From positions 464,940 through 528,939 of the forward strand of contig NIVC01000677.1 of assembly GCA_002269645.1 (NCBI GenBank): 64,000 bases of DNA, in the 5' to 3' direction. The notes below the pieces were generated by a model that had not been told where the DNA came from, did not search any database, and was given only the letters and a program-made list of their open reading frames with translations. Positions 21,695 through 49,339 of the stretch are shown in pieces; the first letter of the stretch is position 1, and every line of letters begins with the position of its first letter. A program made the position numbers and the translations under genes. Source of the DNA: Macrostomum lignano (taxonomy: Eukaryota).

Positions 21695-21752
21695 TTTCTC
21701 TCTCTCTCTCTCTCTCTCTCTCTCTCTCTCTCTCTCTTTCTCTCTCTCTCTC
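21695..21752 (+). repeat. (TC)n microsatellite abutting the iGluR-A stop codon
   Basis: (GA)n on the mRNA strand begins directly at the TAG (21754-21752). Confidence 0.95.
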
Positions 21753-46800: not shown

Positions 46801-49339
46801 ATCTACACACTCCAGGAAGAAAATACCGACAGAATCTCTAGCTACTCGTACATGAAGCTACAAACATATCGGACAAACCTGACTTGGATGTTGCGTCGCA
46901 CAGGTCGTTAGGGATGACAATTGTTGGCAGTGCGAGGCTCCTGCCCAACCTCATCAGAGTCTCCATCAGCGAGCAGCTTCCAACCCCGATGATGCCGCTG
47001 AGACCGGTTTCTTGACAGACTGAATTAAAACAGAAATATTTTTTCGATATAGTTAAGAATTCGAGCTTATACCAGCCGGCTTGTGACAGGAAAATGCTGG
47101 AAATTTGAACTGCCAACTAGATTAAGGATTTGGGTCACTCAATTACAGCATTGGAATGGGTCAGTAGGGAATGGGTCAGTAGAGAATGGGTCAGTAGGGG
47201 ATGGGTCAGTAGGGAATCGGTCAGTATGGGATGGGTCAGTAGGGAATCGGTCAGTAGGGGATCGGGGGATGAGTCAGTATGGGATGGGTCAGTAGGGGAT
47301 CGGGGGATGAGTCAGTATGGGATGGGTCAGTAGGGGATCGGGGGATGAGTCAGTATGGGATGGGTCAGTAGGGGATCGGGGGATGAGTCAGTAGAGGATG
47401 GGTCAGTAGGGGATCGGGGGATGAGTCAGTAGAGGATGGGTCAGTAGGGGATCGGGGGATGAGTCAGTAGAGGATGGGTCAGTAGGGGATCGGGGGATGA
47501 GTCAGTAGAGGATGGGTCAGTAGGGGATCGGTCAGTAGGGATCGGGGGATGAGTCAGTAGAGGATGGGTCAGTAGGGGATCGGGGGATGAGTCAGTAGAG
47601 GATGGGTCAGTAGGGGATCGGGGGATGAGTCAGTAGAGGATGGGTCAGTAGGGGATCGGGGGATGAGTCAGTATGGGATGGGTCAGTAGGGGATCGGGGG
47701 ATGAGTCAGTATGGGATGGGTCAGTAGGGGATCGGGGGATGAGTCAGTATGGGATGGGTCAGTAGGGGATCGGGGGATGAGTCAGTATGGGATGGGTCAG
47801 TAGGGGATCGGGGGATGAGTCAGTATGGGATGGGTCAGTAGGGGATCGGGGGATGAGTCAGTATGGGATGGGTCAGTAGGGGATCGGGGGATGAGTCAGT
47901 AGAGGATGGGTCAGTAGGGGATCGGGGGATGAGTCAGTAGAGGATGGGTCAGTAGGGGATCGGGGGATGAGTCAGTAGAGGATGGGTCAGTAGGGGATCG
48001 GGGGATGAGTCAGTAGGGATGGGTCAGTAGGGGATCGGGGATGAGTCAGTAGAGGATGGGTCAGTAGGGGATCGGGGGATGAGTCAGTATGGGATGGGTC
48101 AGTAGGGGATCGGGGGATGAGTCAGTAGAGGATGGGTCAGTAGGGGATCGGGGGATGAGTCAGTATGGGATGGGTCAGTAGGGGATCGGGGGATGAGTCA
48201 GTATGGGATGGGTCAGTAGGGGATCGGGGGATGAGTCAGTATGGGATGGGTCAGTAGGGGATCGGGGGATGAGTCAGTATGGGATGGGTCAGTAGGGGAT
48301 CGGGGGATGAGTCAGTATGGGATGGGTCAGTAGGGGATCGGGGGATGAGTCAGTATGGGATGGGTCAGTAGGGGATCGGGGGATGAGTCAGTATGGGATG
48401 GGTCAGTAGGGGATCGGGGGATGAGTCAGTATGGGATGGGTCAGTAGGGGATCGGGGGATGAGTCAGTATGGGATGGGTCAGTAGGGGATCGGGGGATGA
48501 GTCAGTAGAGGATGGGTCAGTAGGGGATCGGGGGATGAGTCAGTATGGGATGGGTCAGTAGGGGATCGGGGGATGAGTCAGTAGGGATGGGTCAGTAGGG
48601 GATCGGGGGATGAGTCAGTAGAGGATGGGTCAGTAGGGGATCGGGGGATGAGTCAGTAGAGGATGGGTCAGTAGGGGATCGGGGGATGAGTCAGTAGAGG
48701 ATGGGTCAGTAGGGTCATGAGTCAGTAGAGGATGGGTCAGTAGGGTCGGGGGATGAGTCAGTAGAGGATGGGTCACCAGTCATTAAGGGAATGGTCAGTA
48801 GAATAACCATCAGGAGGTGGGTCATCTACAGGCACTGTGTTCGTGAAGGCCTAAATGCAGTCATGATTGCCTGTTTACCCCGTACAATCGCGCACCTAGA
48901 TAAAGTTGATGAAGTCTTTATTTTGCTATCGACATGCAATTATCCCCAGATTAATTGAGGCCAATACTCCATAAAGTGTCATTCAAGGCCTAACACACGA
49001 CACCCGAACCGTAAGCAAATACCACCCGAGTTTTGTCTCAGATTAATGAGGATTATCGACTAGCGGATGCCCTTCCTCTGACTCACCCAGTCTCGCCGCT
49101 GTCAAAGCGAGGCCCCTGCTGGCGTTAATTAGCCGATAATCCAGCGACTGGCCGGATCCCCGGGGCAAGACTCGCCAATTATTGTTCACTAATCGGCTGA
49201 CGGCTCGCTGGATCGTGTCGGGCGGCAGCGCCTCGTCCTCTATCACCATGGCAACCTTGAAGGCGGCGCAGTCAATGGGCGGAGCTGCCGACCAGAGCGA
49301 CAAGAGGAGCAGCGAAATTGCAACCTGCCGGCTGTCCAT
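37836..49339 (-). CDS. Ionotropic glutamate receptor family protein, paralogue B (13 exons, 852 aa)
   Basis: Exons 49339-49087, 47019-46879, 46036-45926, 45272-45094, 44930-44712, 43662-43501, 42539-42285, 41622-41516, 41427-41334, 39927-39513, 39397-39192, 39101-38929, 38079-37836. All GT-AG, total 2559 nt, same phases as paralogue A, and 10 of 13 exon lengths identical. Pore GSLLQQGQD, M3 AYTGNLTAYLT. Confidence 0.92.
38165..38880 (+). repeat. 10-nt minisatellite (GGGAGTGACA)
   Basis: About 70 units in iGluR-B intron 12. Confidence 0.95.
39962..41120 (+). repeat. 21-nt minisatellite (CCTTATCTCTAACCACTCCGC)
   Basis: About 55 units in iGluR-B intron 9. Confidence 0.95.
41693..42050 (+). repeat. 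44-nt repeat (dimer of diverged 22-mers, ATAGATTAGCAATCCATAAGATACAGATTGGCAATCAATTAACT)
   Basis: About 7 units in iGluR-B intron 7. Confidence 0.93.
42555..43395 (+). repeat. 23-nt minisatellite (CTATAGATTAGCAATCCATTGGT)
   Basis: About 36 units in iGluR-B intron 6. Confidence 0.95.
43810..44690 (+). repeat. 23-nt minisatellite (CTAATCTGGGATTAGAATCCCTA)
   Basis: About 38 units in iGluR-B intron 5. Confidence 0.95.
45370..45900 (+). repeat. 27/28-nt minisatellite (GATGAGATTCTCGACTGGCATCTCAGG)
   Basis: About 19 units in iGluR-B intron 3. Confidence 0.95.
46100..46830 (+). repeat. 33-nt minisatellite (ACTACCAAAAGAATCTACACACTACAGGAAGAA) with 12-nt insert variants
   Basis: Fills iGluR-B intron 2. 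Confidence 0.95.
47150..48780 (+). repeat. 38-nt G-rich minisatellite (GGGATGGGTCAGTAGGGGATCGGGGGATGAGTCAGTAT)
   Basis: About 42 units in iGluR-B intron 1; units of this type carry four G-tracts, AGAGG variants three. Confidence 0.95.

What the first reader, a model, noticed from the sequence alone, without database searches (positions are those of the whole stretch)
21752..49339. Tandem pair of complete, divergent, ATD-containing iGluR-family channels, a candidate sensory receptor clade
Seen: two intact 13-exon genes (848 and 852 aa), each with a signal peptide, a full ~390-aa ATD, S1/S2, an LQQG pore, M3, M4 and only a ~15-aa tail. They are clearly diverged from each other in most exons. 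Established: most protostome IRs lack the ATD (IR8a and IR25a keep it), and metazoan iGluRs fall into AKDF, NMDA, Epsilon and Lambda groups, several of which do not bind glutamate. Inference: a lineage-specific expansion by tandem duplication that may form heteromers and act as chemosensory or non-glutamate receptors.
Basis: partly seen in the sequence, partly recalled or inferred. Interest (0 to 1): 0.75.

Follow-up and report, generated by a model that had tools for sequence, protein, structure and literature searches.

The report
Tandem divergent flatworm glutamate-receptor-family genes
Two intact neighbouring genes of the flatworm Macrostomum lignano encode full-length, highly diverged glutamate-receptor-type ion channel subunits from a poorly studied protostome branch whose activating ligand is unknown; this is a real but fairly ordinary lineage-specific duplication, with no evidence yet of a sensory role.

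Summary
On the minus strand lie two intact 13-exon genes: A at 36364-21752 (848 aa) and B at 49339-37836 (852 aa). All 24 introns are GT-AG, with identical phases in both genes. Each protein has a signal peptide, ATD, S1/S2 ligand-binding domain, LQQG pore, M3, M4 and a 14-residue tail.

The window is Macrostomum lignano. Public models for this locus are fragmented or chimeric.

A and B are 63% identical and each other's closest relatives (bootstrap 100). dN/dS is about 0.25 with saturated dS, so the duplication is old and both copies are constrained. Exon 7 carries a recent 268-bp gene-conversion patch.

The pair nests in a Macrostomum-specific expansion, inside a flatworm clade, inside a protostome clade of spiralian and spider proteins (bootstrap 86-96).

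They are not orthologues of AMPA, kainate or NMDA subunits, and they are not IR25a/IR8a. The nearest labelled class is Delta by profile scores and four-point mapping, but the deep placement is unresolved, and Epsilon-adjacent is not excluded.

The Arg and Asp that anchor an amino-acid ligand are kept. The lower-lobe pocket (G-T-N-I; T/V-D) matches neither glutamate-type nor glycine/GABA-type motifs, so the agonist cannot be predicted.

A sensory function and heteromer formation remain untested. Novelty is a new member of a known kind, and interest is modest.

The parts
21752..36364 (-). Gene A, 13 exons, 848 aa iGluR-family subunit (downstream copy)
   Evidence: Model built; Pfam ANF_receptor + Lig_chan-Glu_bd + Lig_chan
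36115..36364 (-). Gene A exon 1 (ATG, signal peptide, start of ATD)
   Evidence: donor GT, ends in phase 1
35348..35488 (-). Gene A exon 2 (ATD)
   Evidence: AG/GT
34951..35061 (-). Gene A exon 3 (ATD)
   Evidence: AG/GT
34178..34356 (-). Gene A exon 4 (ATD; lower dS 0.44 against gene B)
33746..33958 (-). Gene A exon 5 (ATD)
32591..32749 (-). Gene A exon 6 (ATD)
32048..32302 (-). Gene A exon 7 (end of ATD and ATD-LBD linker); lies within the gene-conversion tract 32052-32319
   Evidence: 97.8% identity over 268 bp, dS 0.06
25824..25930 (-). Gene A exon 8 (S1, first part)
25660..25753 (-). Gene A exon 9 (S1)
25128..25542 (-). Gene A exon 10 (S1 end with the ligand-anchoring Arg in 'ITTLR', M1, LQQG pore loop, M3 up to 'SYTG')
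24254..24459 (-). Gene A exon 11 (end of M3 'NLTAYLTV', S2 with the alphaF motif G-T-N-I)
23151..23323 (-). Gene A exon 12 (S2 with the beta10/alphaI 'TD' motif and the first LBD Cys)
21752..21995 (-). Gene A exon 13 (end of S2, second LBD Cys, M4, 14-aa tail, stop)
37836..49339 (-). Gene B, 13 exons, 852 aa iGluR-family subunit (upstream copy)
   Evidence: residues 508-838 are 99.7% identical to P0001 and residues 356-507 are 100% identical to P0019
49087..49339 (-). Gene B exon 1 (ATG, signal peptide, start of ATD)
46879..47019 (-). Gene B exon 2
45926..46036 (-). Gene B exon 3
45094..45272 (-). Gene B exon 4
44712..44930 (-). Gene B exon 5
43501..43662 (-). Gene B exon 6
42285..42539 (-). 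Gene B exon 7; lies within the gene-conversion tract 42289-42556
41516..41622 (-). Gene B exon 8
   Evidence: junctions 7/8 and 8/9 are reproduced by the independent model P0019
41334..41427 (-). Gene B exon 9
39513..39927 (-). Gene B exon 10 (S1 end, M1, LQQG pore, M3 start)
39192..39397 (-). Gene B exon 11 (M3 end, S2 with G-T-N-I)
38929..39101 (-). Gene B exon 12 (S2 with 'VD')
37836..38079 (-). Gene B exon 13 (S2 end, M4, 14-aa tail, stop)
36365..37835 (-). 1.47-kb intergenic spacer between gene B's stop and gene A's ATG (head-to-tail arrangement)
   Evidence: coordinates
25990..31949 (.). 30-bp minisatellite (about 197 copies) filling intron 7 of gene A; an intronic repeat, not coding

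Best explanation
These are two head-to-tail paralogous genes of Macrostomum lignano. Each encodes a complete subunit of the ionotropic glutamate receptor superfamily: signal peptide, LIVBP-like amino-terminal domain, S1/S2 clamshell, M1-pore-M3 channel core, M4 and a very short cytoplasmic tail.

They arose by an old tandem duplication (dS about 1) within a Macrostomum-specific expansion. That expansion belongs to a flatworm branch of a protostome clade, which also includes mollusc and nemertean 'delta-1-like/kainate-like' proteins and a spider group. The nearest defined class is Delta, within or next to AKDF.

Inferred mechanism: the subunits assemble into tetrameric ligand-gated cation channels. 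The channels open when a small amino-acid-type ligand is clamped between the conserved Arg (GluA2 R485 equivalent) and Asp (E705 equivalent). The Gln at the Q/R site predicts Ca2+-permeable, polyamine-sensitive channels.

The distal pocket (alphaF G-T-N-I; beta10/alphaI T/V-D) differs from both glutamate-type and glycine/D-serine/GABA-type pockets, so the agonist is undetermined. Whether the channels are synaptic or sensory is unknown.

Shown: gene structure, integrity, domain content, paralogy, purifying selection and clade membership. Inferred: channel function, ligand type and stoichiometry.
For: Gene models:
- 13 exons in each gene, all GT-AG, with identical phases.
- All three iGluR Pfam domains score above their cut-offs.
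- Full-length alignment to solved GluK1/GluK2/GluA/GluD1 tetramers at E about 1e-34.

Species:
- M. lignano. P0001 is 99.7% identical to gene B and 97% to gene A, and P0019 is 100% identical to gene B.

Selection:
- dN/dS is 0.25, with dS about 1.07.

Clade structure (NJ bootstrap):
- A+B: 100.
- M. lignano expansion: 100.
- Flatworm clade including Cichlidogyrus and Spirometra: 83-86.
- Clade X, which adds the spiralian proteins: 86-87.
- Clade X plus the spider group: 96.
- Control classes were recovered: Delta 95, AMPA 97, Epsilon 76.

Class HMM scores for A/B:
- Spiralian clade X 262/257.
- Arthropod group 210/225.
- Delta 193/195.
- Epsilon 184/177.
- AMPA and kainate about 140.
- NMDA1 about 100.

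Support for a Delta affinity:
- Slow-evolving clade members score best against amphioxus Delta (P0015: 298 bits against 145-183 for Epsilon).
- In four-point mapping they group with Delta in 54-66% of quartets.

Functional residues:
- Arg, Asp and the LBD Cys pair are kept, the pore reads QQG, and M3 matches SYTANLAAF at 6 of 9 positions.
Against: - No functional or expression data exist for any member of this clade. The one protostome Delta tested, oyster CraGluD, gave no currents (PMC10861852).
- The deep placement is unresolved. In the NJ tree the clade sits apart from deuterostome Delta, weakly next to Trichoplax Epsilon (43%). For the flatworm members, four-point mapping is split between Delta (41-47%) and Epsilon (32-50%), which is long-branch behaviour.
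- The trees are distance-based only, and reference sampling lacks Phi, NMDA2/3, Lambda, Capitella Epsilon and CraGluD itself.
- M3 and the upper-lobe residues (T480->A, Y450->E) have diverged, so normal gating and ligand binding are not guaranteed.
- The ATD is very divergent, scoring only 27 bits against a GluK2 ATD.
Confidence: 0.75

Rival explanations
1. Chemosensory receptors. On this view the expansion plays the role that variant IRs play in arthropods: the channels sit in peripheral sensory cells and detect environmental amino acids or other small molecules, perhaps as A/B heteromers.
For: - The expansion is lineage-specific and tandem, with fast sequence evolution.
- The ligand pocket is unlike that of any deorphanised class.
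- The 14-aa tail carries no long scaffold-binding C-terminus.
- Recently diverged iGluR paralogues are known to switch agonist (PMC13648236).
Against: - There is no expression evidence at all.
- There is no relationship to IR25a/IR8a: A/B score 18-49 bits against 110-130 bits for ordinary kainate and Delta receptors, and the pore reads QQG rather than the IR co-receptor 'PQGGGEAP'.
- Unlike most variant IRs, A and B keep an ATD and the Arg/Asp anchors.
- The wider clade is old and shared with molluscs, nemerteans and a spider, so it is not a flatworm sensory invention.
Confidence: 0.2
2. Epsilon-class receptors (the protostome Epsilon reported from annelids), likely gated by glycine, D-serine, alanine or GABA.
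For: - The NJ tree places the clade weakly next to Trichoplax GluE (43%). A 40% split groups it with Epsilon and NMDA1 against AKDF.
- Flatworm members pair with Epsilon in 32-50% of quartets.
- The Epsilon HMM score (184/177) is close to the Delta score.
- Epsilon is reported in protostomes (PMC12226733).
Against: - Slow-evolving clade members clearly prefer Delta over Epsilon (298 against 145-183 bits; 66% against 22% of quartets).
- The Epsilon attraction grows with branch length, as expected for a long-branch artefact.
- The pocket lacks the W-D / S-x-x motifs typical of glycine-type Epsilon.
Confidence: 0.15
3. Non-conducting, Delta-like trans-synaptic organisers. As proposed for vertebrate GluD1/2, the proteins would act mainly through their ATD and LBD as adhesion or signalling molecules rather than as ligand-gated channels.
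For: - The nearest labelled class is Delta.
- The oyster protostome Delta gave no currents.
- The M3 gate motif has diverged.
Against: - Loss of gating is reported as a vertebrate-specific trait; invertebrate Deltas are active GABA-gated channels (PMC10861852).
- The pore and M3 exon 10 is among the more conserved coding exons between A and B (pN 0.21), and the S1-M4 region shows the same constraint as the ATD (dN 0.27 in both), consistent with a working channel core.
- The ATD is the most divergent part compared with known receptors.
Confidence: 0.08
4. Decaying or artefactual gene copies: pseudogenes, or an assembly duplication.
For: - Public gene models at this locus are fragmented, frameshifted or chimeric.
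- The surroundings are extremely repeat-rich.
Against: - Both reading frames are intact over 13 exons with canonical splice sites.
- dN/dS is 0.25.
- 37% amino-acid divergence rules out an assembly duplicate.
Confidence: 0.02

Closest known systems
Delta iGluRs (GluD1/GluD2; invertebrate GABA-gated Deltas; 'protostome Delta' such as oyster CraGluD)
   Same: - Same full architecture of ATD, LBD, TMD and short-to-moderate tail, with Arg and Asp anchors and a QQG pore.
- Delta is the best-scoring labelled class for the clade in single-sequence, profile and four-point tests.
- The arthropod sister group's best solved-structure hit is GluD1.
- NCBI names for the mollusc relatives are 'delta-1-like'.
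   Different: - The clade is not recovered inside the deuterostome Delta clade in the NJ tree.
- The lower-lobe motifs are T-N-I and T/V-D, where Delta has S-[AS]-[VL] and W-[DE].
- The M3 motif has diverged.
- The tail is much shorter than in vertebrate GluD.
- Identity to human GluD2 is only about 25%.
AMPA and kainate receptors (GluA, GluK)
   Same: Overall fold, and a Q at the Q/R site. The isolated LBD and ATD give their best, though weak, solved-structure hits to GluA2/3 LBDs (up to 51 bits) and the GluK2 ATD (27 bits).
   Different: - They are not orthologues. M. lignano-type canonical receptors fall elsewhere; for example, the trematode GluR1 P0094 scores 612 bits against the kainate profile, against about 145 for A/B.
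- Only 8-13% of quartets pair the clade with AMPA/kainate.
- The alphaF 'GST' and beta10/alphaI 'LE/ME' motifs are absent.
IR25a / IR8a (ATD-bearing co-receptors of protostome chemosensory IRs)
   Same: Protostome distribution, retention of an ATD, and retention of the Arg/Asp ligand anchors.
   Different: - Scores against genuine D. sechellia IR25a/IR8a are very low (18-49 bits), lower than those of ordinary iGluRs. No orthologue was found among 150 relatives.
- The pore is 'LQQGQDFYP' against 'TPQGGGEAP'.
Epsilon iGluRs (GluE; amphioxus, placozoan, cnidarian, ctenophore, annelid)
   Same: A divergent, frequently expanded, non-mammalian class in which agonists switch often. There is weak tree affinity to Trichoplax GluE.
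   Different: Profile and pairwise scores are lower than for Delta among the slow-evolving clade members. The clade does not nest within the labelled Epsilon clade (76% bootstrap without it).

Membership tests
iGluR superfamily | Domain order ATD (ANF_receptor), S1 (Lig_chan-Glu_bd), M1-pore-M3, S2, M4 (Lig_chan) | tested here: met
   Pfam hits are above the curated cut-offs in both proteins, and both align end-to-end to solved tetrameric iGluRs.
iGluR superfamily | Conserved M3 gate motif SYTANLAAF and pore-loop Q/R/N site | tested here: met
   M3 reads 'SYTGNLTAY' in A and 'AYTGNLTAY' in B, which is 6 of 9 identical to the canonical motif (5 of 9 in B). The pore is 'LQQG' with Q at the Q/R site.
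iGluR superfamily | Ligand anchors: Arg (GluA2 R485) and Asp/Glu (E705), plus the LBD disulfide pair | tested here: met
   R is in 'ITTLR' and D is in 'ITDQN'/'IVDQN'. Cys736/793 in A and Cys740/797 in B align to GluA2 C718/C773. T480 is replaced by Ala.
AMPA / kainate classes | Phylogenetic grouping with GluA/GluK orthologues | tested here: not met
   The NJ tree places them elsewhere. Class HMM scores are about 140 bits, against 262 for their own clade. Only 8-13% of quartets pair the clade with AMPA/kainate.
AMPA / kainate classes | Glutamate-type lower-lobe motifs alphaF G-S/T-T and beta10/alphaI L/M-E | tested here: not met
   The motifs are T-N-I (preceded by G) and T-D or V-D. An alternative HMMER register would give G-T-N.
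NMDA class | Grouping with GluN subunits; Asn at the pore N site; W-D motif | tested here: not met
   NMDA1 is the lowest-scoring class (about 100 bits). The pore has Q and the motif is T/V-D. GluN2/3 references were not sampled.
Delta class | Phylogenetic grouping with GluD | tested here: inconclusive
   Delta is the best labelled class by scores and by the quartet plurality for slow-evolving members. The NJ tree, however, keeps the clade outside the 95%-supported deuterostome Delta clade.
Delta class | Delta-type pocket (alphaF S-[AS]-[VL]; beta10/alphaI W-[DE]) | tested here: not met
   The pocket is T-N-I and T/V-D. The hydrophobic third alphaF position is shared with Delta.
Epsilon class | Phylogenetic grouping with GluE | tested here: inconclusive
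   There is a weak sister relation to Trichoplax GluE (43%), but the clade does not fall inside the labelled Epsilon clade. Scores are below Delta for slow-evolving members.
IR25a / IR8a co-receptors | Orthology-level similarity to insect IR25a or IR8a | tested here: not met
   Scores are 18-49 bits against the D. sechellia IR25a/IR8a N-terminal 600 aa. Only partial reference sequences were available.
Variant chemosensory IRs | Loss of the ATD and of one or more of the Arg/Thr/Asp ligand residues | tested here: not met
   The ATD is present. Arg and Asp are kept; only the Thr positions (T480->A, T655->I or N) are lost.
Variant chemosensory IRs | Expression in peripheral sensory neurons | not testable with these tools
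   No transcript or expression resource could be queried with the spliced models.

The most novel reading that the evidence does not exclude
The pair belongs to a protostome-wide orphan receptor clade of flatworms, molluscs, nemerteans and spiders. The clade is defined by a shared lower-lobe pocket signature, G-[TS]-N-[LIV] plus [TV]-D, that matches no deorphanised iGluR class. Its members would be gated by an agonist not yet associated with iGluRs, or they would be excitatory GABA/neutral-amino-acid receptors of protostomes. The Macrostomum expansion would then have diversified ligand specificity, possibly for environmental sensing.
Probability: 0.3. Interest if true: 0.55.

Novelty: new member of a known kind. 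Interest (0 to 1): 0.33.

Why it matters
- Flatworms were absent from the major iGluR phylogenies consulted here.
- The public M. lignano models for this locus are broken. The corrected full-length subunits add a fast-evolving flatworm branch to an uncharacterised protostome clade that is likely Delta-related.
- No member of that clade has a known agonist. M. lignano is a tractable laboratory model with RNAi and transgenesis, which makes these genes reasonable candidates for deorphanisation.
- Such work could also ask whether excitatory GABA/amino-acid-gated Delta-like channels exist in protostomes, a question left open in PMC10861852.
- Otherwise this is an ordinary lineage-specific duplication in a family well known for such expansions.

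Tried and rejected
1. A bait built from recalled GluA2/GluD2/GluN1/GluN2B fragments, meant to pull labelled references, returned 120 GluA2 orthologues only. It was wasted except for human GRIA2.
2. The word-index searches with gene A and with a flatworm profile returned only M. lignano fragments.
3. The search of protein representatives, the look-up of encoding contigs and, by its stated rule, structure prediction do not accept spliced proteins. The chimeric P0001 was used as a proxy query, and no structure was predicted.
4. The CraGluD sequence was not found in the PNAS supplement, so the direct link to the published 'protostome Delta' could not be tested.
5. The IR25a/IR8a hypothesis was tested and rejected.
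6. The pseudogene and assembly-artefact explanation was rejected.
7. P0019 and P0009 were checked as possible transcript evidence. They are UniProt gene-model fragments with no contig on record, so they corroborate the junctions only as independent predictions.
8. The taxon of the unnamed sister clade (P0040) could not be determined. It comes from a transcriptome-like contig of run DRR639055.
9. The supplement of PMC12226733 is an unlabelled CLANS file and was not used.
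Full report
**Observation**

A tblastx comparison of the two halves of the reported interval gave 13 colinear conserved blocks, all minus/minus. I chose splice sites for frame continuity and for agreement between the copies. This produced two complete models.

- Gene A runs from 36364 to 21752 and encodes 848 aa.
- Gene B runs from 49339 to 37836 and encodes 852 aa.
- Each has 13 exons. All 24 introns are GT...AG, and intron phases are identical in the two genes.
- The reported end coordinates are exact.
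- tblastn of both proteins against the whole window finds only these two copies.
- The genes lie head-to-tail, 1.47 kb apart.
- Introns are packed with distinct minisatellites. About 40% of the window is tandem arrays, and intron 7 of gene A is a 6-kb array of a 30-bp unit.

**Domain content**

Both proteins pass the Pfam cut-offs for ANF_receptor (ATD), Lig_chan-Glu_bd (S1) and Lig_chan. Both align end-to-end with solved GluK1/GluK2/GluA/GluD1 subunits, but only at about 120 bits (E about 1e-34), roughly equally across these classes.

A hydropathy and motif scan shows:
- a hydrophobic N-terminal signal segment;
- M1;
- an 'LQQG' pore loop;
- M3 reading 'YTGNLTAYLTV';
- M4;
- a 14-residue tail;
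- the LBD Cys pair.

The ATD alone is extremely divergent, scoring 27 bits against a GluK2 ATD.

**Species and annotation state**

The closest database entries are Macrostomum lignano proteins.

- P0001 is a chimera of gene B exons 10-13 (99.7% identity) fused to gene A exons 1-7.
- P0314 is gene B exons 2-9 with intron read-through.
- P0019 equals gene B exons 7-9 exactly and reproduces two of my splice junctions.

No correct full-length model of either gene was found in the databases searched.

**Paralogy and selection**

A and B are 63% identical in protein. Nei-Gojobori analysis gives pS 0.57 (dS about 1.07, near saturation), dN 0.27 and dN/dS about 0.25. The ATD and S1-M4 halves give similar values. 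This indicates an old duplication with both copies under purifying selection.

Exon 7 is the exception, with dS 0.06. A 268-bp tract is 97.8% identical (B 42556-42289, A 32319-32052). It starts 17 bp inside the upstream intron and ends 4 bp before the exon's 3' end. This is a recent gene-conversion patch. Exon 4 also has a reduced dS of 0.44.

**Relatives**

- The nearest hits are M. lignano paralogue clusters at 34-52% identity: P0004-P0008, P0012 and P0022.
- Identity then drops to 26-31% for spiralian proteins of about 840 aa. These are Pecten and Haliotis 'delta-1-like', Lineus 'kainate 3-like' and Mytilus 'glutamate receptor-like'.
- Also present are a monogenean (Cichlidogyrus) protein, a cestode (Spirometra) protein and a spider (Uloborus) protein.
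- One paralogue, P0012, is solitary in its contig, so tandem arrays are not the rule for the family.

**Classification: references**

Labelled references came from these sources:
- the eLife 2018 source alignment (Epsilon, Delta including human GluD2, kainate and NMDA1);
- the database (human GRIA2 and GRIK1);
- Croset 2010 (partial D. sechellia IR25a and IR8a).

**Classification: results**

1. NJ tree. I built a tree on Scoredist distances from 417 trimmed S1-M4 columns of 114 sequences, with 300 bootstraps.
   - The known classes were recovered: Delta 95%, AMPA 97%, Epsilon 76%.
   - For the pair: A+B 100%, M. lignano expansion 100%, flatworm clade 83-86%.
   - Adding an unnamed transcriptome clade gave 71-78%.
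   - Adding the spiralian clade ('clade X') gave 86-87%.
   - Adding the spider group gave 96%.
   - The deep attachment of this protostome clade is unresolved, at 43% or less.
2. Class profile HMMs. Every flatworm member ranks the classes the same way. For A/B the scores are:
   - spiralian clade X 262/257;
   - spider group 210/225;
   - Delta 193/195;
   - Epsilon 184/177;
   - AMPA and kainate about 140;
   - NMDA1 about 100.

   A canonical trematode receptor (P0094) is clearly kainate-type, at 612 bits.
3. Slow-evolving clade members prefer amphioxus Delta. P0015 scores 298 and 276 bits against Delta, 145-183 against Epsilon and about 147 against NMDA1.
4. Four-point mapping. Spiralian members pair with Delta in 54-66% of quartets and with AMPA/kainate in 8-13%. 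Flatworm members are split between Delta (41-47%), Epsilon (32-50%) and the outgroup, as expected for long branches.
5. IR25a and IR8a have no orthologue among the collected proteins. They score 18-49 bits against A/B, below what ordinary kainate and Delta receptors score (110-130 bits). The pore also differs: 'LQQGQDFYP' against 'TPQGGGEAP'.

**Classification: conclusion**

- The pair is not orthologous to AMPA, kainate or NMDA subunits, and it is not an IR co-receptor.
- It belongs to a protostome clade that is most likely Delta-related. This fits published reports of an early-branching 'protostome Delta' of unknown function (PMC10861852) and of ambiguous protostome AKDF clades (PMC12226733).
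- An Epsilon-adjacent or independent position is not excluded.

**Ligand-binding residues**

I extracted the relevant positions from the alignment and read them against published rules (PMC13648236).

- The universal upper-lobe Arg is present.
- The E705-equivalent residue is Asp.
- T480 is replaced by Ala and Y450 by Glu.
- With helix alphaF kept in register, the 'GST' motif is T-N-I preceded by Gly. A gapped HMMER alignment would give G-T-N instead.
- The 'LE' motif is T-D in A and V-D in B.
- The signature G-[TS]-N-[LIV] plus T-D is shared across clade X. It matches neither glutamate-type receptors (G-S/T-T with L/M-E) nor the glycine/D-serine/GABA type (S-x-V/L with W-D).
- An amino-acid-type agonist is likely, but its identity cannot be predicted. 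The same paper shows that 73%-identical paralogues can differ in agonist.
- Gln at the Q/R site predicts Ca2+ permeability and polyamine block. This rests on established AMPA/kainate knowledge and is an inference here.

- The structural observation is confirmed.
- 'Lineage-specific tandem expansion, not canonical orthologues' is supported.
- 'Sensory', 'heteromeric' and 'non-glutamate' remain untested inferences.
- The IR analogy fails at the sequence level.
- No expression data could be accessed, and no structure prediction was possible for spliced models.

This is a new member of a known kind, in a family notorious for lineage-specific expansions. Its modest interest lies in the corrected models and in the orphan status and distinctive pocket of the wider protostome clade.

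**Limits**

- The trees are distance-based.
- References lack Phi, NMDA2/3, Lambda, annelid Epsilon and CraGluD.
- The IR references were partial.
- Several clade members have no taxon label.
- One large search was wasted on a bait that returned only GluA2.

Noticed in passing
window 42289-42556 (gene B) and 32052-32319 (gene A): A 268-bp tract covering exon 7 and 17 bp of the upstream intron is 97.8% identical between the paralogues (dS 0.06, against about 1 elsewhere). This is a recent gene-conversion patch in the ATD C-terminus / ATD-LBD linker. Exon 4 also has a reduced dS of 0.44.
   Followed up: yes
whole window; e.g. 25990-31949, 39964-41119, 47228-48775, 49590-51723: About 40% of the window consists of high-scoring minisatellite arrays with 10-140 bp units. 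Nearly every intron of both genes carries its own unrelated array, and some arrays give long spurious ORFs and extreme GC skew (for example -0.8 at 50-52 kb).
   Followed up: partly
window 21752-49339 compared with database proteins P0001, P0314, P0019, P0002, P0003: Public M. lignano gene models for this locus are chimeric or fragmented. P0001 fuses gene B exons 10-13 to gene A exons 1-7. P0314 is gene B exons 2-9 with intron read-through. P0019 is named 'Glycoprotein B'. P0002 and P0003 look like frameshifted models of another genomic copy with the same B-then-A order.
   Followed up: partly
window 2609-3322 (+): An open frame encodes the C-terminal half of a protein kinase domain (Pfam Pkinase 83 bits). 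It is probably an exon of a neighbouring kinase gene.
   Followed up: partly
window 6900-7562 (+), 12001-12594 (+), 17933-18730 (+), 55919-56617 (+): These are long non-repeat open frames with no Pfam hit. One is Cys-rich, two have multiple hydrophobic segments, and one has an acidic C-terminus. They may be exons of unannotated neighbouring genes.
   Followed up: partly
window 58000-62000: An AT-rich block (GC 0.31-0.33, against about 0.5 elsewhere) contains short lysine-rich ORFs. It may be a degraded mobile element.
   Followed up: no
L001 (run DRR639055 contig, gene at 860-3121) and proteins P0040, P0045, P0055, P0065, P0076, P0118, P0127: A 100%-supported clade of seven unnamed proteins of about 750 aa is the sister group of the flatworm clade (71-78%). 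P0040 is encoded as a single uninterrupted ORF on a transcriptome-like contig, and its taxon is unknown.
   Followed up: partly
proteins P0134 (Uloborus diversus), P0054, P0067, P0073: A group containing a spider protein is sister to the spiralian and flatworm clade (96% bootstrap), and its best solved-structure hit is GluD1. If the clade is Delta-related, this would conflict with the reported loss of Delta receptors in arthropods (PMC6307864).
   Followed up: partly
L002 (NIVC01001700.1, 249454-287562), gene at 10001-28109: The M. lignano paralogue P0012 (three near-identical genome copies, g1-g3) is a solitary 18-kb gene flanked by RPL32e and SARAF genes. The family is therefore not uniformly tandem-arrayed.
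   Followed up: partly
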